A program made the position numbers and the translations under genes. A DNA stretch of 63,673 bases, counting the filler, from Octopus bimaculoides (Eukaryota): NCBI RefSeq assembly GCF_001194135.2. It is 5 parts of 5 records of this genome, joined end to end, with 100 filler letters (N's around TTAATTAATTAA, not from the genome) between each part and the next. Parts side by side here need not be neighbours in the genome. Positions count along the whole stretch, not along the records: positions 43,585 to 59,781 come from NC_068998.1; 4 more parts are not named here. One strand, given 5' to 3'. The notes under the pieces were generated by a model. That model saw only the letters and a list, made by a program, of their open reading frames with translations, was not told the origin of the DNA and made no database searches. Positions 43,585 through 59,781 of the stretch are shown one piece after another. Positions within the stretch are counted from its first letter, which is position 1. Each line of letters opens with the position of its first letter.

Positions 43585-43820
43585 AGACACATACACTCAT
43601 ACACTCATACACTCATACACGCATACACTCATAGACACATACACTCATACACTCATACACTCATACACGCATACACTCATAGACACATACACTCATAGAC
43701 ACATACACTCATAGACACATACACTCATAGACACATACACTCATAGACACATACACTCATACACGCATACACTCATAGACACATACACTCATAGACACAT
43801 ACACTCATAGACACATACAC
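43585..43820. repeat. 8/16-bp minisatellite (AGACACATACACTCAT and variants)
   Basis: Direct reading of the periodic sequence. Confidence 0.9.
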
Positions 43821-44790
43821 ACACACATTCCCAAATATGCAGATGAAAAGGGAGAGCTTGAGATAGAGTAGGAGAAGCTGCAGAACTCCGGTGAGAGAGA
43901 GAACTCCGGTGACAAATAAACAGACAGCCCACCTACCGGCCAGCCAGCCAGCCAGCCAACCAAACATTCAAACAAACCGACAGACAGACAGGCAAGCAGA
44001 CACGCAGGCAGACAGACTGACAGACAGATTGATGAAGAACAGTAACTGGTCGGTAATGATTCCTCTTAATATCACTGTGTAATGTTCTCTTTTATGACCG
44101 TAGACGGTTTATTGTGTGCCCGCTGTTTTTATCGCCCTCTATCGGCGGCGGTCATGACTAGGGGGGGGGGGATTAAGTGGATAGAGTAGGGATAGGCATG
44201 GAAGGGAGGTGAAGGGAGAGGCGAGAAGGCAAGTGTCGGTGGCGTGACGGTTGTGGTGGTGAGCGGGTTTGTTCTAGGGATATGGCTAAAATGTTAATGG
44301 GGTGATTGTAGAAATTAGCTTAAATCGTTGATAGCTGTGGCAGCCATATTAAAAAAAAACAGCAGCCATGTTGTCTCCACTATAGGATGATCGTAAACTG
44401 CTCAGAGAAGCTAAGCCTTGGGCTATATAACAAAAATAACGCCAAGGACACGAAGGAGGTTATATTCAGTCACCGGTCACCTAGAAGTAGCAGCCAAATC
44501 TCTTTCGGATCGCTTCCTATTCTATTTAAAGAAGGGTGCATTGTAGAATATGGCTTTATAATCTATATGTGCAGAAACAAGACGGAATAGTCATGGATGG
44601 AAAGTCTTTGATCATAGAATGATGTGACGGAGTTGACTTGGTACTAAATAATTAACAAACAGCAGCAACAACAACAACAGTAGTAGTTGTAATGGAAGTG
44701 GTGGTTGTAGGAGGAGTTACTACAGAGAAAGTGGCAGCGAAGATTAATAAAAAAAAAACGCTGATTCTAGTCCTATAAATGATAACAATT

Positions 44791-44832
<42 letters not shown>

Positions 44833-44849
44833 GGTTTCCACTGAATTAG

Positions 44850-44940
44850 GGATCTCCATCAGGTACTTTAGTCGACTTATGAATCGCTTAGGTTTAAGAA
44901 AAGATAGAGAGAAATGGGAAATACATCCCACTCATATGAA
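44850..44940 (+). CDS. Candidate exon resembling the entry to a tyrosine-kinase domain (ISIRYFSRLMNRLGLRKDREKWEIHPTHM)
   Basis: Perfect AA|GTAAGT donor at 44941 with an in-frame stop if unspliced. GL.KD..KWEI.P resembles the W-E-I motif preceding the glycine loop of Src/RTK kinases. The acceptor is ambiguous (44849 or 44862) and no downstream kinase exon was found. Confidence 0.4.
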
Positions 44941-46059
44941 GTAAGTGTATACCTTCTTTTTCTTACGCCTGTAGATACCAACGATCGTATCAGGTTGAAA
45001 ATATAAGTCAGCCTGTGTTCTGGCGGAAGAGAAAAGACAACTTAACTAATTCAGAATTTAAAGATAAAACCGCTATAAATATGACCATAAAAATCTGTGA
45101 GACGTTCTTAAAATGTAAAGAAATGAATGAGTGTGGTTGACGGATCGAGAAGAACAATATAATCGCCTCCGCTGTTTTTATTTTGTTTTATTTCACTTTT
45201 ATTCTATGTTATCTCATGTGTAACCTTTACCATGGAGAAGGGGCCATGTTTGAATGAACAGTAAATGATACTATCAGGAAGAGAACACGCGTACATGTAT
45301 ACGTTTATATATACGCGCGCGTGTGTGTGTATATGTGTGTGTGTTTGTTTGTATGTCTGTATGTATGTATGAATGCATGTAAGTGCATGTTTGGATGTGT
45401 GTATGTATGTATGCGTGTATGCATGTATTTAATAAGTTTGCATGCATGTATGTATTTATGTATGTATGTATGTAAGTACATATGTATGTATGTGTATGTA
45501 TGTATTATGTAAGTATGCATGTATGTACATAGGTACATATGTATGTACATGTGTATGATAAATTAAGTACCAGGTGCATACTGGGGTCGATCCAATCGAC
45601 TGGCCCCCTCCCCTAACTGCTAAGCCTCACCCCTAACTACGAAATGCCGCTAAGCATTTCGTCCAACGTGCTAATGATTCTGCCAGTTCACCGCCTTTTT
45701 TGATGCTTTAATAATGATGACTGTTCGCACGTATATCATCAGAATGTTTAAAGTTTCATAATGTTCTTCATATACCATTTAACGGAGCCTTTCTCGAGTA
45801 ATTTCTCGCTGTTTCGCTGGAAAGATTCCTTTTGTACATAAGTAGGAAGGATTAAATGGTCTTTCTTTCAAGTGTACAGTTTCGTATCTAACTCCCAATC
45901 ATTTCTAATATATTAAAGAGATCGTCTTATTCATGTCTATGTTTGGTAAAGGTTTGATCATCAGAGAACATCATGTTAAGTCTACAACTAAACTTACTGA
46001 TGTACTAGTGCCTGACTTTTCGTTGTTCTAAGCATTGTCACTGTTACTGCCACTACTGT

Positions 46060-46470
46060 AAGCTGGTGGAATCGTTAGCACAACGGATAAAATAGTTCCG
46101 AGTTCAAATCTCACCAAGGACGATTTTACCTTTTATCTTTTCGGAGTGGATAAAGTGAGAAGCAGTCAAGCATCGGGATCATAATTTATTTAATCTGTCC
46201 CCCAACACCCAAAGATTCAGAAAATTGCTAAAATTGCTAGCATTGGTTGTCAAGCGATGGGGGGAGGACAAACGCAGACACAAAGACGCATACACACACA
46301 TATATATATGAATATATAGCAGGCTACTTTCAGTTTCCGTCTACTAAATCCGCTCACAAGCATTTGGTCGGCCGGAGGCTATAGCAGAAGACACTTGCCT
46401 AAAGTACCACGCAGTGGGACTGAACCCACAACCACGTGGTTGGGAAATAAGCATCTTACCACCACAGCAA
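46060..46470. repeat. Diverged SINE A (+, 46060-46220) adjacent to SINE B (-, 46240-46470)
   Basis: Motif matches to both families. Confidence 0.7.
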
Positions 46471-47631
46471 TGACAAGAACAAAAAAAAAACAATTATTCA
46501 ATTACAATCTATGTTAGATGGATTCGAACTCATAACACAGACTAAGGAAAGGAACGGAAAACAACAGCAAAAAAAGCACACACACACACACACACACACA
46601 CCAACCTATCCGTTGTCCAACTCATCCGCCTCCGCACAAAGCCAGGATTAAGTAAGATAACTGCAGAAACATGAATACCTGATAATATTAGTCGAAGCAA
46701 CGATGTATGCAAGTAGGGAAGAATAGTGAGAGGAGAGAGGTAGAGGCCGAAGCTGTATGCAACGCATTAGTCTATTATAGGAAGGTGTATGTGTCTATTT
46801 TGGCTAATATAGTTGAGGCCATAAAATATATACACGTGACAAGGATTGAGATTGAATAAGGAATGGTAGTAATGCTTTTTCGTTATGTATCTCTGTTAAT
46901 ATGCTAATGCTGTGAAAAGAGTAATATATTTACGCGTCAGCGCGTGGTTGAAAGTGTGTGTATGAGTATATATGTGCGTGTGTGTGTGCATGTATGTGCG
47001 AGTGTGTGTGTGAATGCGTGTATGAAGTACATATATATATATATACATACGCACCCATATTCCCACATATATATAAACATACGCACCCATATACCCACAT
47101 ATATATATACATACGCACCACACGTATATTTATACATATGTAAATACGAATCAATATAGATGTATATGTGTGTGTGCGTGTGTAAAAATGTATATGTATG
47201 TATACATATATGTGTGCATGTACATATATATATGTGTGTTTATGTATATATATCTATATATATATATATATATATATATNNNNNNNNNNNNNNNNNNNNN
47301 NNNNNNNNNNNNNNNNNNNNNNNNNNNNNNNNNNNNNNNNNNNNNNNNNNNNNNNNNNNNNNNNNNNNNNNNNNNNNNNNNNNNNNNNNNNNNNNNNNNN
47401 NNNNNNNNNNNNNNNNNNNNNNNNNNNNNNNNNNNNNNNNNNNNNNNNNNNNNNNNNNNNNNNNNNNNNNNNNNNNNNNNNNNNNNNNNNNNNNNNNNNN
47501 NNNNNNNNNNNNNNNNNNNNNNNNNNNNNNNNNNNNNNNNNNNNNNNNNNNNNNNNNNNNNNNNNNNNNNNNNNNNNNNNNNNNNNNNNNNNNNNNNNNN
47601 NNNNNNNNNNNNNNNNNNNNNNNNNNNNNNN

Positions 47632-47666
<35 letters not shown>

Positions 47667-47882
47667 CGTGTGAGTGTAAATGTGAGTATTCGTATATAAA
47701 TATATATATTACGTATAGTATATATACATATATGTGTTTGTGTGTGTGTGTATGTATATAAAAATGGCACTTGCATGTATATATAACAACTTAGTATGTG
47801 AAAATGTATATATACATATGTGTGTGTGTGTGTATGTGTATTTATGTATATATGCATATATATGTGCATAAATATATCTATC

Positions 47883-47936
<54 letters not shown>

Positions 47937-48539
47937 TGCAAGCATAGAACGGAATACATACGTGTAAGCGTATCTACAAATGTATTTCTTGTATGTCAGA
48001 ATCCCTGTGTGTTTGCGCATGCGTGTGGGCAAGCACGTGTATCACATTTTAATTTGGTTCTGTGTTTCATGTACGCGGTTTGTCTTTTTGAAGCCCGAAA
48101 ACCACATAACGTAACATTACAGGAATATTTTTATTAATATCCATCGGCGGCAAAGATTACGCCATTTACTGCCGCAGAAATAACATCGCCACGCCACCTC
48201 TACCACCACCACCATCACCATCATCACCACCACCACCACCATCACCATCCTATACCGACCAATAAGCCAGCCATGCAGCCAGCCAGCCAGCCAGGCAACA
48301 AACCCACCAGCTTGATAACCAACCAACCAACTAACCAACCAGCCAATCAACAACTGCTAACCGTTACTAACAACCACCAGGGGTCGTGCATTAACTACCG
48401 TCATCCGGTTATGTTTCTCTCATTTTAACTACTCGAAGTGACAATTAATGTGTATGTTAATATGCATACATACACGCATATATACATACATATATAAATA
48501 TACACTCATACATACATATATACATACATACCTACACAC

Positions 48540-48584
<45 letters not shown>

Positions 48585-48627
48585 CACAATCATACATACA
48601 TATATACATACATACATGCATGTATGC

Positions 48628-48666
<39 letters not shown>

Positions 48667-49253
48667 NNNNNNNNNNNNNNNNNNNNNNNNNNNNNNNNNN
48701 NNNNNNNNNNNNNNNNNNNNNNNNNNNNNNNNNNNNNNNNNNNNNNNNNNNNNNNNNNNNNNNNNNNNNNNNNNNNNNNNNNNNNNNNNNNNNNNNNNNN
48801 NNNNNNNNNNNNNNNNNNNNNNNNNNNNNNNNNNNNNNNNNNNNNNNNNNNNNNNNNNNNNNNNNNNNNNNNNNNNNNNNNNNNNNNNNNNNNNNNNNNN
48901 NNNNNNNNNNNNNNNNNNNNNNNNNNNNNNNNNNNNNNNNNNNNNNNNNNNNNNNNNNNNNNNNNNNNNNNNNNNNNNNNNNNNNNNNNNNNNNNNNNNN
49001 NNNNNNNNNNNNNNNNNNNNNNNNNNNNNNNNNNNNNNNNNNNNNNNNNNNNNNNNNNNNNNNNNNNNNNNNNNNNNNNNNNNNNNNNNNNNNNNNNNNN
49101 NNNNNNNNNNNNNNNNNNNNNNNNNNNNNNNNNNNNNNNNNNNNNNNNNNNNNNNNNNNNNNNNNNNNNNNNNNNNNNNNNNNNNNNNNNNNNNNNNNNN
49201 NNNNNNNNNNNNNNNNNNNNNNNNNGTTGGTTGATCCACTACTCAGGAAGAGA

Positions 49254-49327
49254 CTATTCTAGAGTACGTCCTGTCTGGTCTTCGAAACGTCTAGATAGAA
49301 TAGAGACAGCTGATGAAGGGATATTCC
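49254..49327 (+). ncRNA. Candidate non-circularly permuted hammerhead ribozyme (best copy)
   Basis: ACGUC cleavage after 49270; stem I CTGTCT(49271-76)/AGACAG(49304-09); GAAA 49284-87; stem III ACGT/ACGT plus an 8-bp extension CTATTCTA/TAGAATAG; CUGAUGA 49310-16; short stem II (A)GGG/TTC. Confidence 0.7.
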
Positions 49328-49470
49328 AAGGGGCTTTCCGTTTTCCTATGTGTTCGTTCCGTTGTCTGTAGTTTATTGTTCTAACGTCCTGTACCTTGAT
49401 ATGCATGTATATACACATGTAGATGTAAGTATGTACATATATGTGTGTATACATGTATATATATTCTTTG

Positions 49471-49511
<41 letters not shown>

Positions 49512-49583
49512 TGTCTGTGTCTGTGTCTGTGTGTGTGTGTGTGTATGCATGTATGCATGTATGTTTACAAGTATATAAAGAAC

Positions 49584-49630
<47 letters not shown>

Positions 49631-49678
49631 GCATACAGACAGGCAGACAAACAGATAGAGAGAGATACATTGATTGAG

Positions 49679-49715
<37 letters not shown>

Positions 49716-50045
49716 TTTAACATAAATGTGTAGATACACATATACACTACATCTATACATGTGCCCTAGCGCGTGTGCGTGTGGGGGGTTTCTTCTGCTG
49801 ATGTTGGCATTACTCAGCGACATTTTTGGTCCCTTTTTCTGGAGTTGCCTTCAATAACATATTGTTTGTTTTTATTTCTTTACAAATTAGATTAAAGTAA
49901 CTTTCCACTTTTTCACTCCATTGTGCATCAACAATGATTCGATCGTGGAACCAAACAGTGAAATAGATTTGGAAGTCTTATCGACTACTTTGGTCAGATC
50001 TGGATGGACCTATTCTTTTAATGAAGGATCAGAATTTAAACGAAC

Positions 50046-50147
50046 CTGTCTTTTGGCTCGGACAGCACCAACATCAAATATGAGACCCAGGTTAGCTGTA
50101 GGATATTCTAAAGCTTTCTGAAATTCCTTCAGATGTGAACCAGCATA
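50046..50147 (-). CDS. Candidate internal exon (YAGSHLKEFQKALEYPTANLGLIFDVGAVRAKRQ)
   Basis: 102 nt, phase 0-0; pyrimidine-containing TTCAG acceptor, CAG|GTTCGT donor; protein-like composition; family not recognised. Confidence 0.35.
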
Positions 50148-50235
50148 CTGAATTCCAGTCAAAGCAACAAATAATGGTAGAATATCATATATATATATAA
50201 TATTATTATCGAGCTCCAAAATAGAGAAGTCTAAA

Positions 50236-50568
50236 GGATACAAATTAATTTATTAATTAATTAACATATTCACCTACAGTTGTTTCGTTTCACACAGAAA
50301 GTTTTAAGATTACAAAAAATATATAAATATATATAACTTTAACGCATGAGTGCACACACACATAGATTTGACTACACATTCTGAGCTTGCCAATGGATCA
50401 GAATGTAATCCTTGTATTGTCCTCCGTACACCCTGATGAGTTTCCATCAAAGGTATTTTAAGATGCAAAAAATATATATTTATGCATGTTTTGTAGTTTT
50501 AATTTTGGTTGTGAAATGAAACAATTGTAGGTGAATATGTTAATTAATTAGTAAATTTATTTGTATCC
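50236..50568. mobile_element. Inverted-arm element (59-bp arms) carrying a hammerhead 3' half in both arms
   Basis: 50236-50294 is the near reverse complement of 50510-50568; both arms contain GAAA(C/T)GAAACAA(C/T)TGTAGGTG. Confidence 0.75.
50426..50536 (+). ncRNA. Type I minimal hammerhead with long loop II
   Basis: Stem I CACC/GGTG; CUGAUGA 50433-39; stem II GTTTC/GAAAT; GAAA 50518-21; palindrome ACAATTGT; GUA cleavage after 50529. Confidence 0.65.
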
Positions 50569-50664
50569 ATTAGATCTCTCTGACTTCTAACACGATAACA
50601 ATATTTGATATTTTACGATATTTTATATAATCTATTCACTGAAGAAATATCTCTTCAAAATATA

Positions 50665-50790
50665 CAGGGTGTCCACAAATCTGGGTACATGCGGATTAAC
50701 ACATACTTTAAGAAATCATTATTTCTTATATTTAATTGTTTATGTTATGATTTTATTTACTCCATGTACCCAGACTTTGTGGACACTCTG
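50665..50790. mobile_element. Tc1/mariner-type MITE (126 bp)
   Basis: TIRs CAGGGTGTCCACAAATCTGGGTACATG / CATGTACCCAGACTTTGTGGACACTCTG with TA on both sides. Confidence 0.85.
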
Positions 50791-51416
50791 TAATATATTA
50801 AATCAGTGTATCTTGGATTAAAAAAATATCCCTATAAGAGGTTTAAATAGCCACATTGTGACTATATATATATAGAGAGAGAGANNNNNNNNNNNNNNNN
50901 NNNNNNNNNNNNNNNNNNNNNNNNNNNNNNNNNNNNNNNNNNNNNNNNNNNNNNNNNNNNNNNNNNNNNNNNNNNNNNNNNNNNNNNNNNNNNNNNNNNN
51001 NNNNNNNNNNNNNNNNNNNNNNNNNNNNNNNNNNNNNNNNNNNNNNNNNNNNNNNNNNNNNNNNNNNNNNNNNNNNNNNNNNNNNNNNNNNNNNNNNNNN
51101 NNNNNNNNNNNNNNNNNNNNNNNNNNNNNNNNNNNNNNNNNNNNNGGGGAGGGGGGAGAGAGAGGGGAGACACTTATAGCATGCAAGTACGCACTTTTAG
51201 AGACAAAGCAGTTTACATACATGTATACTGCTTTGTCTCTATACATGTGTGCCTATACATACATGTATAGAGACACGTGTAGGCATATACGTATTTATAT
51301 ATACATATACATACAGAAATACACATACAATACACTGTAGACACATACATGCACACATATTTTTTCATGCATGTATTTATACACGCGAATACACGCATAC
51401 ATACATGCACACACAA

Positions 51417-51465
<49 letters not shown>

Positions 51466-51904
51466 CACGTACACACACACACACACACATTAGCCAGTCA
51501 TTAATTAATAGCTTAGTTACACCAACACCGCCAACAACTAGAACTTCAACACCAACATGGCCGCCACCACCACCACCACCACTACTATANNNNNNNNNNN
51601 NNNNNNNNNNNNNNNNNNNNNNNNNNNNNNNNNNNNNNNNNNNNNNNNNNNNNNNNNNNNNNNNNNNNNNNNNNNNNNNNNNNNNNNNNNNNNNNNNNNN
51701 NNNNNNNNNNNNNNNNNNNNNNNNNNNNNNNNNNNNNNNNNNNNNNNNNNNNNNNNNNNNNNNNNNNNNNNNNNNNNNNNNNNNNNNNNNNNNNNNNNNN
51801 NNNNNNNNNNNNNNNNNNNNNNNNNNNNNNNNNNNNNNNNNNNNNNNNNNNNNNNNNNAACCAGTGTGACTATGACGAGAGCAAACGAACATAACAACCA
51901 TTTA

Positions 51905-51988
51905 ACGATGACGGTGGTGAACGATGACGGTGGTGAACGATGACGGTGGTGAACGATGACGGTGGTGAACGATGACGGTGGTGAACGA
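51905..51988. repeat. 16-bp minisatellite (ACGATGACGGTGGTGA) x5
   Basis: Direct reading. Confidence 0.9.
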
Positions 51989-52771
51989 TTAGATATGCTT
52001 CGTCATCATCATTATCATCACCAGCATCATCATTATCACCAAAATCATCATCTCCCTCGTTATCATCGTCATCATCATCATCACCATCATCATTATCACC
52101 ATCATCATCATTATCACCAAAATCATCATCTTCATCGTTATCATCGTCATCATCGTCATCACCATCATCGTCATCATCATCATCATTATTATCATCATCA
52201 TTATCATCATCAGCAGCAGCAGTATCATTATCACCATCGTCGTCGTCGTCATCATCATCATCATCATCATCATCATCGTCATTGTTATCATTATCATGAT
52301 CAAGAACGACAACATCGTCACCGACGCGGTTGTTCTCCATTTCCTCCTAGTCCTCCTCCTCCTCATCATCATCATCATCATCACCATCACCATCATCATC
52401 ATCATCATCATCATCATCCTCATCATCATCATCATCATCGTCATCATCTCCCAACACTGCAACCATCACCGCCACCACCACCAACACCAGTTGCGTACTA
52501 GGGTCGATCTAATCGACTGGTCCCACCTTCCCCAAAACATTGCGGGCTTTGTACCTAGAGTAGAAAAGAGTACTTTTGCCAATACCACCAACATACTGCC
52601 ACCAATACCAACCACACCACCGAAGCCATCACGCCAGCCATCGATTGAACCAATCTCTGGTCGTTCGCCTTGCTAGATACAGCAGTCGAATTTCCCTCAA
52701 ATCAAGACCTGCCACCTTAAGAAAGAATACATGGTGGTGTTGATGGTAGTGGTGATGGGCCTGTTATTGTT

Positions 52772-52828
<57 letters not shown>

Positions 52829-53498
52829 GGTTACGCGCGTAGTATGATGGTGGTATCTGTGTGGTATGGCGAGGGAATGGCTGCGGTGATGGTGGCGTTG
52901 TTTGTGCTGGAGGTAACTTCCCTGGTTATAATTATACATGGTTCTTGTTCCACTGCACGTTGGAGAAAAAAAAAAGCCAAACGTCGTGATGGTCATGAGT
53001 GGAATGTCTTCGATCATAGAGCTACTAAACTGCAACCACGCCACCGAGCATACGTCACTGCAACAGCCTCGACCAACACACAACAACTAAAACCACCAGC
53101 ATCACCTCCTCATCATCATCATCATTATCATCATCGTCTTTTCCACCTTCTCCCCTTCTCCTCCTCCTCCTCCTCCTCCCCCTCCTCCTCCGCCTCTTCT
53201 CCCCCCTGCACCACCTCCTCCAATAGTTTTTTTTTATGCCACTTCAACATATTCTCCTTCATTCATTTAGTCTCCGTTTCATGATTTGCCCCGCGGGTAT
53301 CACGTCGAAAGTGTCACTGTTTAATGTGATGTAGTGAACGTACGAATGTGCGCGCGCGTGCGCGTGTGTATGCGTTTGTATGTGTTTGTATGCGCGTGCG
53401 CGTATATATTTGAGCATGGTGTGTTCTGACGTTACGTATGTGGCTATACAATTGTACTGTGTATCGTGTGATGTATTGTTATATATATATATACATAA

Positions 53499-53564
<66 letters not shown>

Positions 53565-53747
53565 ATAGCATGGCGACTGTGCGTAGTGTATGGTGAGCGA
53601 TGTGTATAGTATGGAATGTGGTTTGTAGTGTCTGCAGTGTTTTGGAGTGTTGGTGTGAGTGACGTGGGGCGTGTGTATTATGTAGGGGTATTGTGTTATG
53701 AGAGACAATCCACACACGTCAATACTGTGTGTGTGTGTGTGTGTGTA

Positions 53748-53791
<44 letters not shown>

Positions 53792-53971
53792 AGAAACCAA
53801 GAGGGGACAACTCTTCAGAAAAACTGACGTGGAGGATGTCAAAAAATATCTAAGCACATGTCAACATAGTACTGGTTCATATACATACACACACACACAC
53901 AAACACACACGCAGACACACACACATACACACGCATAGAAAACAAACGAACAAACAAACGCATGCATATTA

Positions 53972-54041
53972 GGTGCAGGGGTGGGTGAGTGGTAAAAAGC
54001 TTACTTCCCAACCACATGGTTCCGGGTTCAGTCCCACTGCG
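53972..54041 (+). repeat. Isolated SINE family B head
   Basis: GGTGCAGGGGTGGGTGAGTGGTAAAAAGCTTACTTCCCAACCACATGGTTCCGGGTTCAGTCCCACTGCGT. Confidence 0.75.
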
Positions 54042-54044
54042 TCG

Positions 54045-54580
54045 AGTTTACCGTTCATCTTTAGAGGGTTGATGAAAGACGTACAAACTTGGGCTTGCTC
54101 CTCTTTATAATCTATATAAAAGACCTTCCCAGCGTCGTAAATCACTGCAAAGTGAAAATATTTGCTGATGATGCTAAGCTCCAGCAAATCATCAATGAAG
54201 AAGAAGACCGAACCCAACTCCAGTCTGATCTATATGCTGTGAGTCAATGGGCAGATAAAAACAAAATGAAGCTGAACGAGGGAAAATCTGAGTTGATGNN
54301 NNNNNNNNAAAAACAAAATGAAGCTGAACGAGGGAAAATCTGAGTTGATGCATTTTGGAAGAAAGTCTATACTAAAACAGCCATACTCCCTTCCTTCAGG
54401 GGAACCGCTCACGGCATCCAACAATATCAGAGACCTAGGAGTAATTGTTTATAACAATCTCAGATGGAGTTCCCACATCGACAATAAGGTCGATATAGCT
54501 CGTAGGATGAGCTCCTGGATCTTAAGAACCTTCCGGTCCAGAGAACAAGGTGTCATCATTCCACTTTTCGCCTCCTTTGT
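54045..54580 (+). mobile_element. CR1-group LINE RT fragment
   Basis: LLFIIYIKDLP...IFADDAKL...LQSDL..V..WA..NKMKLNEGKSELMHFG...RDLGVI; a 41-bp duplication flanks the 10-N gap. Confidence 0.85.
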
Positions 54581-54774
54581 ACGGTGGTGGTGGTGGTGGT
54601 CGTCGTCGTCGTGGCCGTTGTTCTCGTCGTCGTCATAGAGACAGCCGTTATGGAGTGCAGTTGGTAGTCTTGGTAGCACTGACAAAGTAGTAGTAGTAGT
54701 AGTAGTAGTATAGTTTGGAGGTGGTGTCTTTGCTGGGGTGATATTGTCATCGTTGTAGTAGTAGTAGTAGTAGC

Positions 54775-54833
<59 letters not shown>

Positions 54834-56201
54834 CAGTGGGGGTGATATCAGAGATGGTGGACTTAGCGAAAACAGTAGCAACATTAGTAGTAACAGTCGT
54901 AGTAGAAGTAGTTGTAGTAGTGGTGGAATTGGTGGTGGTGGTGGTGGTGGCGGAGGTAGTAGTAGCACTGGACAAGGTGAACATGGTTCAGGAAGTAGTA
55001 GAATCGGTTACTGATGGTAGCAAAAGAGAGTTGAGCCTACAGTGATCGTCATGAACTCAAAAGTTGGTTTGAACAGTGTAATGGCTGTAATAGAAGGTGG
55101 TGGTCGTGGCGGCGGTGGCAGCGGCGGCTGCGGTGGCGGCGGTGGTGGTGGTGGTGGAGGTGTTAGTGGAATAATGTGTCGGCTGATAGATGAGTTTGTT
55201 ACTGACAATTGACGATGTACTCCTGAAGGCTAAAAAATTATTAGAAACTCGTTTTNNNNNNNNNNNNNNNNNNNNNNNNNNNNNNNNNNNNNNNNNNNNN
55301 NNNNNNNNNNNNNNNNNNNNNNNNNNNNNNNNNNNNNNNNNNNNNNNNNNNNNNNNNNNNNNNNNNNNNNNNNNNNNNNNNNNNNNNNNNNNNNNNNNNN
55401 NNNNNNNNNNNNNNNNNNNNNNNNNNNNNNNNNNNNNNNNNNNNNNNNNNNNNNNNNNNNNNNNNNNNNNNNNNNNNNNNNNNNNNNNNNNNNNNNNNNN
55501 NNNNNNNNNNNNNNNNNNNNNNNNNNNNNNNNNNNNNNNNNNNNNNNNNNNNNNNNNNNNNNNNNNNNNNNNNNNNNNNNNNNNNNNNNNNNNNNNNNNN
55601 NNNNNNNNNNNNNNNNNNNNNNNNNNNNNNNNNNNNNNNNNNNNNNNNNNNNNNNNNNNNNNNNNNNNNNNNNNNNNNNNNNNNNNNNNNNNNNNNNNNN
55701 NNNNNNNNNNNNNNNNNNNNNNNNNNNNNNNNNNNNNNNNNNNNNNNNNNNNNNNNNNNNNNNNNNNNNNNNNNNNNNNNNNNNNNNNNNNNNNNNNNNN
55801 NNNNNNNNNNNNNNNNNNNNNNNNNNNNNNNNNNNNNNNNNNNNNNNNNNNNNNNNNNNNNNNNNNNNNNNNNNNNNNNNNNNNNNNNNNNNNNNNNNNN
55901 NNNNNNNNNNNNNNNNNNNNNNNNNNNNNNNNNNNNNNNNNNNNNNNNNNNNNNNNNNNNNNNNNNNNNNNNNNNNNNNNNNNNNNNNNNNNNNNNNNNN
56001 NNNNNNNNNNNNNNNNNNNNNNNNNNNNNNNNNNNNNNNNNNNNNNNNNNNNNNNNNNNNNNNNNNNNNNNNNNNNNNNNNNNNNNNNNNNNNNNNNNNN
56101 NNNNNNNNNNNNNNNNNNNNNNNNNNNNNNNNNNNNNNNNNNNNNNNNNNNNNNNNNNNNNNNNNNNNNNNNNNNNNNNNNNNNNNNNNNNNNNNNNNNN
56201 N

Positions 56202-56224
<23 letters not shown>

Positions 56225-56232
<8 letters not shown>

Positions 56233-56552
56233 CTTTTACTTGTTTCAGTCATTTGACTGCGGTCATGCTGGAGCACCGCCTTTAGCCGAATAAATCGAAT
56301 TCAGGACTTATTCTTTGTAAGCCTAGTACTTATTCTATCCGTCCCTTTTTGCCGAACCGCTAAGTGACGGGGACGTAAACACACCGACATCGGTTGTCAA
56401 GCGATGGTGGGCGGGACATATACAGACACAAACAACAAACACATACATACATATATATATATATATACACATACTACGGGCTTCTTTCAGTTTCTGTCAA
56501 CCAAATCCACTTACAAGCCTTGGTCGGCCCGAGGCTATAGTAGAAGACACTT
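56225..56552 (-). repeat. SINE family B lacking its head
   Basis: Reverse complement match to 27548-27950. Confidence 0.85.
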
Positions 56553-56755
56553 AAGATTGTAAGGTCTTGGTTTCGATTCCTTGTCCACGCGTCTCCATGT
56601 ATTCTTGAATAAAATACTTCAGTTCCTCCACTACTACTTTCAGGCCCCTTCTTTCAATATTATACTCCCTTTTCAGCACCCTGTATTTTTGTTCGCTTTT
56701 AATCTCCTCTTTCTCTTTTCGGTCTAACACAGAGGTTTTCTTCGAGAGCATTTCT
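56553..56755 (-). mobile_element. R4/Dong-clade internal fragment
   Basis: YRVLKREYNIERRGLKVVVEELK resembles the L..KY.I...GL..V.EELKQ motif upstream of the RT in R4/Dong ORFs (recalled). Confidence 0.55.
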
Positions 56756-56759
56756 CATC

Positions 56760-57627
56760 ATGAACATCATGAACATCATCATCATCATTATTATTATTAT
56801 TATTGGTGGTGGTGGTGGTGGTGGTNNNNNNNNNNNNNNNNNNNNNNNNNNNNNNNNNNNNNNNNNNNNNNNNNNNNNNNNNNNNNNNNNNNNNNNNNNN
56901 NNNNNNNNNNNNNNNNNNNNNNNNNNNNNNNNNNNNNNNNNNNNNNNNNNNNNNNNNNNNNNNNNNNNNNNNNNNNNNNNNNNNNNNNNNNNNNNNNNNN
57001 NNNNNNNNNNNNNNNNNNNNNNNNNNNNNNNNNNNNNNNNNNNNNNNNNNNNNNNNNNNGTGGTGGAGGTGGTGGTGGTGGTGTCTAAATGCTGTAAGTC
57101 TTGTTGTAAATCAATACATTTGTACCAAATGCTGAATCACAATCAACGTTTCGACAGAGACGACAACGATAACAACAGCAACAACAACACCAACAAAAAC
57201 AACAACATCATCATAGGAAATAACAAGAACAAAAACAGCAACAATGATTACAAAGTTAAGAAAAACAAGCCAAGGTAAGCTAGCAAACAAACGAAACAAA
57301 ACAAAACAAAACAACGGCTGCTTCAAAAACATAATTAATTACGTTTTCGTGACCTTCATCATTGTCTCCTCATCACCATCATCATCGTCATCATCACAGT
57401 CGTTGTCGGTATTATTACAAACGTTCGAAACCATCGCTCGCACGATCACCGTTATCGTCAATGTAAGTGTCAACATCACCGCCCCCCTTTTCCTCCTCCT
57501 ACCACCGCTCCTTCTTCTTCCGACTCTTCCGTCTCCCTCCGCCTCCTTTACTTCTTCCTCCTCGACGGCTCCATCCTCCGCAACAACAACATCATCATCA
57601 GCAGCAGCAGCAGCATCCCCATCATCG

Positions 57628-57666
<39 letters not shown>

Positions 57667-58435
57667 CCATCATCATCCCCATCATCGTCAACATCATCAT
57701 CATCATCCTCAGCATCATATACTTATATGTATACTTATAATTATATATACGAATGGGTGAAATTGTTTCCGCTTCTCAGAACATATGTTTCAGAGTTATG
57801 CTTTAATAAGAAGTGAGATGGTATAGCCATGGTTGCTAAGTTAGCACCCACGTAGTCAAATTCCTATGTAGTCATGACAGAAACGAGTGTAGTACCAAAA
57901 ACCCTAAGCATACGGTGACATATTCAACGTACTGGGTACAGGGTAAGAAGACAACAGATTAAAGGAGTACATGGACACATAACTCTGTACTTTATTCAAC
58001 ATTGAAAATCGTTGAGATAAAACTTGAAGCAAAATAATTCCTTATTTATAGCATGGAGTAAACATCTTAGTCATTGAAAAACATGGAAAGACTTATGAAA
58101 GGACTTATGATGACAAATGATAAATGTTTAGCTTGTATCGCTTACCAAGCAAGAACACTTCCGTTATTTGTTAATTTTTAGCCATAAACGTTTAAGTACG
58201 CCGACGACAAGAGGAACAGTAAAATTATAAAAGACATTAAGAAGAACAATAGCAACAATGACATTAACAATAATGATATTAATAATGACAATAACAACAA
58301 CAGCGACGACAACAAACGCAATTATAACAACCGCAATTATAGAAACAGTAACAATAACAGTAACAAAAACGAAGATTACAATTGTGATAAATACCAAAAT
58401 AATCGACAAAACAACAACAGTGACAATAACAAAAC

Positions 58436-58510
<75 letters not shown>

Positions 58511-59154
58511 CATGGACGTCATTAATAGGCATAACAACGACGACGACGACGTTAATAACAACAACAGTAACAACACCAACAAGAGGGAATTATTCGACAA
58601 GACTATTAAGAAAACAAGCAAGTCTAATAGGTTGGAGTCTTTTATTGTTGGTTTCGTGACTTGGGTTTGGTATGGAGGAATGAAGGTGGGGTGGGGGTAC
58701 TGTTGGCGATGGTGATGGTGGTATGATGACGTTGGTGGTGATGGGATTGGTGCTGAGGCTTGTTTTTGTTGTTTTGGTGGTGGTGGTGGTGGTGGTGGTG
58801 CTGCTGCTGCTGCCGCCGCTGCTGTTGCTGCTCGTGCTGATGGTGGGGAAATTGGTGGTGATGGTGATGGTGTTGGCGGTGATGGTGCTGGTGGTGTTCG
58901 TCGTGCCGGCGGTGGCGTTGGTCGTGATGGTGGTGGAGTTGTGGGACGTGGTGGTGGTGGTGGTGGTGGTGGAGCTCGATTTGTTAATTGGTTTCCTGTT
59001 GGTAGTGATATGTCGGAATGGTAAGCATGTCCTCATTGATGGTATTCTGCCGACATTGCAAGTTTGGTAGGGTCTGCTTTAGGGGTTTTTGTTGCCAAAT
59101 AACGCGGTTGAGGATGATAATGGTGATGGTGCTGCAGCTGATGATGATGATGAA

Positions 59155-59192
<38 letters not shown>

Positions 59193-59740
59193 CGATGATG
59201 ATGATGACGATGACGAGGATGATGATGGCGATGATGATGATGGCGATGATGATGATGATGATGGCGATGATGATGATGACGATGATGATGATGATGATGA
59301 TGATGATGACGAGAATGATGATGATGATGACAAGGATGATGATGGCGTGATGATGATGGCGATGATGATGAAGGTGATGATGATGAGGAGTAGGGGGGAA
59401 TGATGCTGCTGAAGATGATGATTATGACGATGATGTTGATGTTTACAATAATGATGATGAGAAGTAAGATGAATGACAAGGAAAATGACAATGAGGATGA
59501 CGCTGATGGTGATGATGATGATGATGAGGAGGAGGAGGAGGAGGAGGAGGAGGAGGAGGCTGCGAAGGAGGAGAAGCAGAAAGGGAGAAAATAAGAGGAG
59601 GGAGAGGATGACGATGAGAAGGAGGAGGATGATCATGACAATCATGATCATGATCATGTCAATGATGAGGGTGAGTCGTGCTAAAAGTATTAGTATTATT
59701 AGCAACATCAGAACGTACAGCAGCAGCATCAGTAGCATGC

Positions 59741-59781
<41 letters not shown>
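56760..59781. repeat. Mosaic trinucleotide low-complexity tract (CAT/GAT/GGT/AAT/TAG)
   Basis: The poly-H/S/D/M/I ORFs in all frames are by-products of the repeats; similar tracts lie at 51990-52480 and 54590-55160. Confidence 0.85.

What the first reader, a model, noticed from the sequence alone, without database searches (positions are those of the whole stretch)
49254..49327. Hammerhead ribozyme with its strands in a non-circularly permuted (Z-Y-X) order
SEEN: 5'-ACGUC|CUGUCU-GGUCUUC-GAAACGU...AGACAG-CUGAUGA-AGGG-3'. All conserved core nucleotides are present. Stem I (CTGTCT/AGACAG) abuts both the GUC site and CUGAUGA, and stem III (ACGT/ACGT) is extended by CTATTCTA/TAGAATAG. KNOWN: with X = stemI-CUGANGA-stemII, Y = stemII-GAAA-stemIII and Z = stemIII-UH-stemI, types I/II/III are the circular orders XYZ, YZX and ZXY. 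INFERENCE: the order here is ZYX, which is not a circular permutation and must fold as a pseudoknot-like monomer or act as a dimer. Linking stem I directly to stem II is plausible because these helices lie side by side in the active fold. Standard HHR descriptors would miss it. As I recall, non-circularly permuted hammerheads have been reported by a comparative-genomics screen, so the novelty of this particular family needs checking. Weak point: stem II is only 3-4 bp, G-U rich, with an extra A after A9.
Basis: partly seen in the sequence, partly recalled or inferred. Interest (0 to 1): 0.92.

Follow-up and report, generated by a model that had tools for sequence, protein, structure and literature searches.

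The report
Single permuted (type-SGC) hammerhead candidate
One stretch of about 75 bases in a repeat-rich animal scaffold has every core base of a hammerhead self-cutting RNA in a rearranged order that was first described in 2023. It is a lone copy with a weak middle helix, so it is a plausible but unproven new example, not a new kind of ribozyme.

Summary
ACGUC|CUGUCU-GGU-CUUC-GAAA-CGU...AGACAG-CUGAUGA-A-GGG lies at 49266-49320 on the + strand, inside one contig that starts 28 nt upstream, after a 559-N gap.

The "Z-Y-X" order is the published type-SGC hammerhead (Eckert et al. 2023, PMC10085705), which was shown to cleave, so the topology is not new.

- A 3-4 nt linker joins stems I and II.
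- One unpaired base follows CUGAUGA. This holds for all 30 parsed family members and for SGC-3, so the "extra A" is a hallmark and not a defect.
- A 5-bp helix, GAAUA/UAUUC, sits where the family's bridging helix lies.

A covariance model built only from published sequences ranks this locus first in the piece (13.4 bits, E 0.025).

A loose descriptor hits random sequence about 1-3 times per 100 Mb.

Points against:
- No second copy turned up in any collection searched, so covariation cannot be tested.
- Stem II is only G-C plus two G·U pairs.
- The bridging helix is marginal.
- An 8-bp hairpin extension competes with the active fold.

A copy of the cleavage-site block 118 nt downstream (p about 0.006) hints at an excisable unit.

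Verdict: probable new member, or decayed copy, of a known kind. Cleavage is untested.

The parts
49254..49261 (+). CUAUUCUA: 5' arm of an 8-bp helix with 49296-49303. It is an alternative, probably inactive, extension of stem III.
   Evidence: The duplex with the whole extended stem is -10.4 kcal/mol. Pseudoknot geometry makes it incompatible with stem I (inference).
49266..49270 (+). S block. ACGU is the stem III 5' strand (16.4-16.1) and C49270 is C17. The predicted scissile bond is between 49270 and 49271.
49271..49276 (+). Stem I 5' strand, CUGUCU
   Evidence: Six Watson-Crick pairs with 49304-49309, -6.3 kcal/mol as a duplex
49277..49280 (+). Linker GGU, plus the mismatched C49280, joining stem I directly to stem II
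   Evidence: The paper describes a linker of 'typically three nucleotides'.
49281..49283 (+). Stem II 3' strand, UUC (11.3-11.1)
   Evidence: It pairs with GGG 49318-20 as G-C, G·U, G·U. The isolated duplex has no net stability.
49284..49290 (+). G block. GAAA is G12-A15.1, and ACGU (49287-49290, sharing A15.1 with GAAA) is the stem III 3' strand.
49291..49303 (+). 13-nt spacer CUAGAUAGAAUAG. It holds the candidate bridging-helix strand GAAUA (49298-49302) and the competing arm UAGAAUAG (49296-49303).
   Evidence: The spacer length is within the published 0-44 nt.
49304..49309 (+). Stem I 3' strand, AGACAG
49310..49317 (+). C block core: CUGAUGA (C3-A9) plus one unpaired A
   Evidence: An extra nucleotide is present in every parsed published member.
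49318..49320 (+). Stem II 5' strand, GGG (10.1-10.3)
49322..49326 (+). UAUUC: candidate 3' strand of the helix that bridges stems I and II
   Evidence: Five Watson-Crick pairs with 49298-49302, offset 1 nt from stem I and 1 nt from stem II. Only -1.1 kcal/mol.
49376..49392 (+). Second S-like block, UUGUUCUA-ACGUC|CUGU. It copies 49257-61 plus 49266-74 with a 4-nt indel. A second cleavage would fall between 49388 and 49389.
   Evidence: Gapped alignment reaches this score in 121 of 20000 shuffles. The 9-mer occurs only at these two places in the piece.

Best explanation
This is a DNA-encoded copy of a type-SGC (non-circularly permuted) hammerhead-like RNA motif in an animal genome.

Proposed mechanism if the + strand is transcribed:
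- The RNA would fold into the double-pseudoknot hammerhead core.
- Stem III (ACGU/ACGU) pairs the site block with the GAAA block.
- Stem I (CUGUCU/AGACAG) pairs the site block with the CUGAUGA block.
- Stem II (GGG/UUC) pairs the GAAA block with the CUGAUGA block.
- A 3-4 nt linker on one side, and a short helix GAAUA/UAUUC on the other, hold stems I and II side by side.
- Cleavage would follow C49270.

Shown here: the sequence anatomy and its fit to the published family.
Inferred: folding and catalysis.

Stem II and the bridging helix are marginal, and a stronger hairpin (49254-49303) competes with the active fold. The copy is therefore most likely a slow, conditional or decayed ribozyme, not a robust one.
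For: - All core nucleotides and three helices are in S-G-C order, and this is the only such site in the piece.
- The loose descriptor is rare in null sequence: 1 hit per 100 Mb with independent bases, 9 per 340 Mb with the Markov-3 model.
- The order equals the validated type SGC.
- Every spacing parameter falls within the range of the published examples:
  - the linker;
  - one unpaired nucleotide after A9, seen in 30 of 30 parsed members and in SGC-3;
  - the 13-nt spacer;
  - the bridging-helix offsets.
- A covariance model built only from 21 HRIMA-1 sequences plus SGC-3 places this locus first, full length: 13.4 bits, E 0.025, against 6.0 bits for the next hit.
- An extra A at this position is tolerated in a natural hammerhead.
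- The site block is repeated 118 nt downstream, while the G and C blocks are not.
Against: - No relative was found anywhere:
  - pattern scans of viral, metagenome and prokaryote genome contigs;
  - two protein-space searches of the frames that are open across the island;
  - the rest of the piece.
  So there is no covariation evidence.
- The control scans for the known HRIMA-1 family also found nothing. These collections could not have shown RNA-only relatives, and none of them holds animal genomes.
- Stem II has one G-C and two G·U pairs and no net duplex stability. Published examples range from -2.1 to -7.1 kcal/mol.
- The bridging helix is -1.1 kcal/mol, against -6.6 to -13.3 in the published examples.
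- The competing extended hairpin is -10.4 kcal/mol.
- The stem I strands resemble (GTCT)n/(AGAC)n microsatellite motifs that are common in this piece.
- The finding comes from a scan of an unknown number of windows, and a loose match is expected tens of times per large genome.
Confidence: 0.5

Rival explanations
1. It is a chance look-alike. Decayed microsatellite and palindromic sequence ((GTCT)n/(AGAC)n, (TAGA)n/(TCTA)n, TTCGAA, ACGT, TCTAGA) happens to place CUGAUGA, GAAA and GUC next to short complementary runs. No ribozyme was ever selected here.
For: - The loose descriptor is expected about 2.6 times per 100 Mb in Markov-3 sequence, so tens of times per animal genome. Some random hits look quite like type SGC (first hit).
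- The piece is saturated with simple repeats, including the stem I motifs.
- The copy is single, with no relatives.
- Stem II and the bridging helix are at or below the stability expected by chance.
- The ordinary minimum-free-energy fold is no better than that of shuffled sequence, z = +1.06. That method cannot see pseudoknots.
Against:
- With these included, the expectation falls to about 10^-5 per window (my arithmetic).
- A model built only from published sequences gives E 0.025.
- The site block is duplicated (p about 0.006).
Confidence: 0.33
2. It is a two-site cassette, S1-G-C-S2. The one catalytic G-C module cuts both the upstream site (SGC topology, after 49270) and the downstream copy of the site (GCS topology, after 49388). 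This would free a 118-nt RNA (49271-49388) with ends that can be ligated into a circle, as satellite and retrozyme hammerheads do.
For: - TTCTA...ACGTCCTGT recurs 118 nt downstream.
- The upstream arm of the copy, UUGUUCUA, still pairs with UAGAAUAG. Its two differences from CUAUUCUA are both transitions that keep pairing as wobbles (read).
- SGC, GCS and CSG are rotations of one another, so a unit-plus copy of a circular or tandem RNA would look like this.
Against: - Stem I at the second site is only 4 bp.
- The repeat is short, and p about 0.006 becomes about 0.02 after allowing for three blocks tested.
- There is no tandem repeat by TRF.
- The flanks beyond about 22 nt are unrelated.
- 118 nt is smaller than any such RNA I know of (own knowledge).
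- The only published GCS example is a weak candidate.
Confidence: 0.12
3. It is a fragment or mis-join of a canonical hammerhead element, for example a tandem type I unit, with the remainder hidden in the 559-N gap directly upstream.
For: - The contig starts 28 nt before the motif.
- Assembly gaps often mark tandem repeats (own knowledge).
- Animal hammerheads are typically in repeats (own knowledge; Cervera & de la Pena 2014, cited).
Against: - All three blocks and all helices lie within one contig, with no gap inside.
- No canonical order can be completed. There is no GAAA downstream of CUGAUGA within 100 nt, and no GAAAC-hairpin upstream of the GUC.
- There is no Rfam hammerhead hit.
- There is no tandem repeat.
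Confidence: 0.05

Closest known systems
Type-SGC hammerhead ribozyme, 'variant' group (example SGC-3; Eckert et al. 2023, PMC10085705)
   Same: - The same block order, site-GAAA-CUGAnGA.
- A 6-bp stem I of non-fixed sequence.
- A short linker directly joining stem I to stem II.
- One unpaired nucleotide after CUGAUGA.
- A helix between the segment 5' of the stem I 3' strand and the segment 3' of stem II.
- GUC/AUC-type site, and a stem III of 4-5 bp.
   Different: - Ours has a 3-bp wobble-rich stem II, against 4 Watson-Crick pairs.
- Ours has a 5-bp A/U bridging helix, against 7 bp.
- The unpaired base is A, not U.
- Ours is encoded in animal genomic DNA, while the known ones are reported from metatranscriptome RNA (for HRIMA-1).
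- There is no sequence similarity beyond the core.
Type-SGC / HRIMA-1 motif (407 sequences, soil, spruce and sludge metatranscriptomes)
   Same: Topology, core, linker, extra nucleotide and bridging helix. A covariance model built mostly from this family hits our locus full length.
   Different: - HRIMA-1 has an invariant stem I, AUGUU/AACAU. Ours is CUGUCU/AGACAG.
- HRIMA-1 lies opposite a hairpin ribozyme on small RNA contigs. No hairpin ribozyme is detected here.
Type II (GSC) hammerhead
   Same: The G...C part of our motif is a type II ribozyme strand closed by stem II.
   Different: In type II the site block sits between G and C. Here it is moved outside, to the 5' side (and perhaps also the 3' side), and a 13-nt spacer takes its place. 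This creates crossing helices.
CChMVd (+) hammerhead with extra A10
   Same: An additional A between A9 and G10.1. It is reported to lower the trans-cleaving rate only moderately.
   Different: It is a canonical hammerhead of a plant viroid with no permutation.
Hammerheads of animal repeats (Penelope-like elements, retrozymes, satellite DNAs)
   Same: The setting is animal genomic DNA, and the function may be release of a small RNA from a longer transcript.
   Different: Those are canonical type I motifs in tandem or terminal repeats (own knowledge; Cervera & de la Pena 2014, cited). Here there is no tandem array. The only reverse-transcriptase fragment nearby is LINE-like and 4.7 kb away.

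Membership tests
Type-SGC hammerhead ribozyme (Eckert et al. 2023) | Blocks in the 5'-3' order S (site), G (GAAA), C (CUGAnGA) | tested here: met
   S 49266-76, G 49280-90, C 49304-20
Type-SGC hammerhead ribozyme (Eckert et al. 2023) | All conserved core nucleotides: C3 U4 G5 A6 N7 G8 A9, G12 A13 A14, A15.1-U16.1, H17 not G | tested here: met
   CUGAUGA, GAAA, an A-U pair closing stem III, and C17
Type-SGC hammerhead ribozyme (Eckert et al. 2023) | Stem I and stem III abut the core | tested here: met
   Stem I has 6 Watson-Crick bp and stem III has 4 Watson-Crick bp
Type-SGC hammerhead ribozyme (Eckert et al. 2023) | A stable stem II closed by G10.1-C11.1 | tested here: inconclusive
   G-C is present but is followed only by two G·U pairs. 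Duplex energy is 0.0 kcal/mol, and -2.0 in the alternative register that loses G10.1-C11.1. Published examples are -2.1 to -7.1. My automatic parse of the published sample gave mostly 5 bp.
Type-SGC hammerhead ribozyme (Eckert et al. 2023) | A short linker (typically 3 nt) joins the stem I 5' strand to the stem II 3' strand | tested here: met
   GGU plus the mismatched C, 3-4 nt
Type-SGC hammerhead ribozyme (Eckert et al. 2023) | One unpaired nucleotide between CUGAnGA and stem II. This is my observation on the published sequences, not a criterion stated by the authors. | tested here: met
   A49317. It is U in 30 of 30 parsed HRIMA-1 rows and in SGC-1, -2 and -3.
Type-SGC hammerhead ribozyme (Eckert et al. 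2023) | A helix bridging the other sides of stems I and II. It was required for cleavage of SGC-3. | tested here: inconclusive
   GAAUA 49298-302 pairs with UAUUC 49322-26 as 5 Watson-Crick bp at the right offsets. It is only -1.1 kcal/mol, and the 8-bp helix with 49254-61 competes for the same bases.
Type-SGC hammerhead ribozyme (Eckert et al. 2023) | Recognised by a model built from published members | tested here: inconclusive
   Model R1 (21 HRIMA-1 sequences plus SGC-3; stem III and the bridging helix only) gives 49264-49332 as the top hit: 13.4 bits, E 0.025 in 32 kb, with rough calibration. This would not be significant genome-wide.
Type-SGC hammerhead ribozyme (Eckert et al. 2023) | Covariation in stems I-III among homologues | not testable with these tools
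   No homologue was found. No animal-genome DNA collection is available here.
Type-SGC hammerhead ribozyme (Eckert et al. 2023) | Site-specific self-cleavage that is abolished by the G5 mutation | not testable with these tools
   This needs a bench assay.
HRIMA-1 subfamily | Invariant stem I AUGUU/AACAU, small RNA contigs, and a hairpin ribozyme on the opposite strand | tested here: not met
   Stem I is CUGUCU/AGACAG. The context is animal genomic DNA. There is no hairpin-ribozyme hit.
Canonical hammerheads, types I/II/III | A three-way junction in the order CGS, GSC or SCG, matched by the Rfam hammerhead models | tested here: not met
   No hammerhead family appears at E<=10 on the island, nor among the 150 best of 188 matches listed for the whole piece. 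No canonical order can be completed by eye.
Retrozyme / Penelope-like element hammerhead | A type I motif within tandem or terminal repeats of a retroelement | tested here: not met
   No tandem repeat and no second full copy. The nearby reverse-transcriptase fragment is LINE-like and 4.7 kb away.

The most novel reading that the evidence does not exclude
An animal genome encodes a working non-circularly permuted hammerhead. One G-C catalytic module is flanked by two copies of its own cleavage site (SGC upstream, GCS downstream). It would excise a 118-nt RNA that can circularise. This would be the first DNA-encoded, eukaryotic example of this topology, and the first locus to use two permutations with one core.
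Probability: 0.1. Interest if true: 0.8.

Novelty: new member of a known kind. Interest (0 to 1): 0.42.

Why it matters
- In the paper read here, the main type-SGC family (HRIMA-1) is reported from environmental RNA only, on small contigs that carry a hairpin ribozyme on the other strand and are thought to be circular virus-like RNAs.
- A working copy in an animal chromosome would extend this topology to cellular DNA genomes.
- It would raise the question of whether it arose by integration of such an RNA, by rearrangement of a type II motif, or independently.
- It would also show that descriptor and Rfam screens of eukaryotic genomes miss a class of ribozymes.
- As it stands, the locus is a good and cheap candidate for a cleavage assay, but it is not evidence of any of this.

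Tried and rejected
1. Canonical type I/II/III reading. No order can be completed, and Rfam gives no hit.
2. Other copies in the piece. There are none; the repeat finder returned only microsatellite families.
3. Relatives elsewhere. Two complementary gapped patterns in viral, metagenome and prokaryote genome contigs gave 0 hits.
   - The control pattern for HRIMA-1 also gave 0 hits. These collections lack the metatranscriptomes, so they are uninformative for RNA relatives.
4. Protein-space route to eukaryotic assemblies. Both frames that are open across the island gave no candidates. Exact-ORF look-ups found nothing on record.
5. Organism identification through the reverse-transcriptase fragment. 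The nearest relatives (64-76% identity) are in NCBI assembly GCA_024449705.1, whose organism I could not resolve.
6. Whole-unit tandem duplication. A permissive alignment gave p about 0.02 with many gaps, and TRF found nothing. I rejected this in favour of a short repeat of the site block only.
7. tRNA or SINE head upstream. ARAGORN found nothing.
8. Vector or synthetic ribozyme contamination. No plasmid or phage match.
9. Nested minimum-free-energy folding. It is uninformative because it cannot model pseudoknots; z = +1.06.
10. The many mir-297, mir-3149 and similar Rfam hits are sub-threshold matches to TG/TA microsatellites, not genes.

Full report
**What is there**

The piece (43585-59781) is a draft eukaryotic scaffold. 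It has eight N gaps and is saturated with TG/TA, GAT/ATC and similar microsatellites. The finding sits in a 175-nt island of complex sequence (49226-49400). That island lies at the very start of a contig, between a 559-N gap and a (TA)n/(TG)n tract.

The + strand reads:

CUAUUCUA-GAGU-ACGUC|CUGUCU-GGU-CUUC-GAAA-CGU-CUAGAUAGAAUAG-AGACAG-CUGAUGA-A-GGGA-UAUUCC

**Is it more than chance?**

I wrote a descriptor for the order site-GAAA-CUGANGA. It required:
- stem I of at least 5 bp;
- stem III of at least 4 bp;
- stem II of at least 3 bp;
- 0 or 1 nucleotide after CUGANGA.

It finds this site and nothing else on either strand of the piece.

In null sequence it finds:
- 1 hit in 100 Mb of sequence with independent bases;
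- 9 hits in 340 Mb of order-3 Markov sequence trained on this repeat-rich piece.

That is roughly 3 x 10^-3 per 60-kb window, but tens to a hundred per large animal genome. The loose match alone would therefore not be convincing in a genome-wide screen.

I then added the published spacing rules and a bridging helix of at least 5 bp. By arithmetic on the same base frequencies, this brings the expectation to about 10^-10 per position. That is about 10^-5 per window and about 0.5 per 2-Gb genome.

**What the order means**

- They divide the ribozyme into blocks S (site), G (GAAA) and C (CUGAnGA).
- They show that types I, II and III are CGS, GSC and SCG.
- They report SGC, with 407 HRIMA-1 and 176 'variant' sequences, as a natural non-circular permutation.
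- That permutation cleaves at the predicted bond, is killed by the G5 mutation, and needs stems I, II, III and a fourth helix that bridges stems I and II.

The topology is therefore known. I found no later paper in the held library that reports it in a eukaryotic genome.

**Fit to the published family**

I rebuilt SGC-1, SGC-2 and SGC-3 from the oligonucleotide table. I also read about 40 HRIMA-1 sequences from the machine-read copy of Supplementary Figure 6.
- A 2-4 nt linker runs from the stem I 5' strand to the stem II 3' strand.
- One unpaired nucleotide follows CUGAnGA. It is U in 30 of 30 sequences my script could parse, and in SGC-3.
- The bridging-helix 5' strand ends 0-1 nt before the stem I 3' strand.
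- Its partner starts 1-3 nt after stem II.

Our locus has matching features:
- a 3-4 nt linker (GGU, then a mismatched C);
- one unpaired A;
- a 13-nt spacer, within the published range of 0-44 nt;
- five Watson-Crick pairs, GAAUA (49298-302) with UAUUC (49322-26), at offsets of 1 and 1.

An extra A10 is also a natural variant of the CChMVd (+) hammerhead and lowers the cleavage rate only moderately.

I built a covariance model from 21 HRIMA-1 sequences plus SGC-3. It modelled only the two mutually nested helices, stem III and the bridging helix. It ranks 49264-49332 first in the piece, full length, at 13.4 bits with E about 0.025. The next hit scores 6.0 bits. This is an independent but weak confirmation. 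It would not be significant genome-wide.

**What speaks against a good ribozyme**

Helix energies, computed as isolated duplexes:

| Helix | This locus (kcal/mol) | SGC-1, -2, -3 (kcal/mol) |
|---|---|---|
| Stem I | -6.3 | -1.2 to -2.9 |
| Stem III | -1.7 | -2.9 to -4.5 |
| Stem II | 0.0 | -2.1 to -7.1 |
| Bridging helix | -1.1 | -6.6 to -13.3 |

- Stem II here is G-C, G·U, G·U. The alternative register AGGGAU/GUCUUC gives -2.0 but loses the G10.1-C11.1 pair.
- The 3' end of that extension (G49303) abuts the stem I 3' strand (A49304) with no linker.
- In a pseudoknot, the strand that follows the first stem must cross it. A 14-bp stem cannot be crossed by zero nucleotides. This is an inference from standard H-type pseudoknot geometry.
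- The extension also uses the same bases as the bridging helix.
- It is therefore an alternative, presumably inactive, conformer and not part of the active fold.

The locus thus has a perfect core in a poor scaffold. That fits a slow or switchable ribozyme, a decayed copy, or a coincidence.

**A second site**

The site block recurs 118 nt downstream. TTCTA (49379-83) plus ACGTC|CTGT (49384-92) matches 49257-61 plus 49266-74 with a 4-nt indel.
- A gapped alignment of the S block against the next 150 nt is reached by 121 of 20000 shuffles. The G and C blocks show nothing.
- The 9-mer occurs only at these two places in the piece.
- The copy's upstream arm, UUGUUCUA, differs from CUAUUCUA by two transitions. 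Both transitions keep pairing with UAGAAUAG as wobbles.
- TRF finds no tandem repeat, and the flanks beyond about 22 nt are unrelated.

The layout S1-G-C-S2 would let one catalytic module cut on both sides, in SGC and then GCS topology. These two orders are rotations of each other. The result would be a 118-nt RNA. I treat this as a suggestive lead and not as a finding.

**Search for relatives and context**

- No copy of the element was found in the pattern scans of viral, metagenome or prokaryotic genome contigs.
- Control scans for HRIMA-1 also failed in the viral and metagenome contigs. Those collections cannot show RNA-only relatives, and none of them holds animal genomes.
- Searching the 5.8-billion-protein collection with the two frames that are open across the island gave no candidate.
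- There is no plasmid or phage match and no tRNA.
- The only recognisable gene remnant in the piece is a frameshifted LINE-type reverse-transcriptase fragment at about 53980-54640 (Pfam RVT_1, E 1e-5).
- The nearest relatives of that fragment (64-76% identity) lie on tiny contigs of NCBI assembly GCA_024449705.1. I could not resolve that organism.
- The host is therefore an animal-like eukaryote with an extremely repeat-rich genome. I cannot say more.

**Verdict**

- The most likely reading is a genuine type-SGC hammerhead-like element, active weakly or no longer. I give this about 0.5, with a further 0.1 for the two-site cassette version.
- The main rival is a chance look-alike in repeat-derived sequence, at about 0.33.
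- If real, it is a new member of a known kind in a new setting: animal DNA, where the main published family (HRIMA-1) is known only from environmental RNA.
- Two things would settle it. One is a single cleavage assay. The other is a homology search of the source genome. Neither can be done with these tools.

Noticed in passing
window 53980-54640 (+): A frameshifted fragment of a LINE-type reverse transcriptase (Pfam RVT_1, E 1e-5; motifs ...IFADDAKL... and ...NEGKSELMHFG...). Its nearest relatives, at 64-76% identity, are on very small contigs of NCBI assembly GCA_024449705.1.
   Followed up: partly
window 54299-54308: The same peptide stretch, NKMKLNEGKSELM, is encoded on both sides of a 10-N gap, in two different reading frames of the translation. 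This looks like two overlapping contig ends that the assembler failed to merge.
   Followed up: no
window 43585-59781, e.g. 45284-45555, 46946-47270, 47636-48046, 48444-48636, 53338-53573: There are dozens of Rfam matches to mir-297, mir-3149, mir-466, mir-5014 and similar families. All are far below the gathering scores. They are TG/TA/CA microsatellites folding on themselves, not microRNA genes.
   Followed up: yes
window 52000-52440 and 59100-59350: Long (ATC)n/(GAT)n-type trinucleotide arrays lie in inverted orientation about 6.8 kb apart, 73-80% complementary over about 240 nt. They generate long spurious ORFs on both strands.
   Followed up: no
window 49280-49295: Three palindromic hexamers or tetramers sit in a row within the G block: TTCGAA, ACGT and TCTAGA. 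TCTAGA also occurs at 49258-63, which gives a second possible register for the stem III extension.
   Followed up: partly
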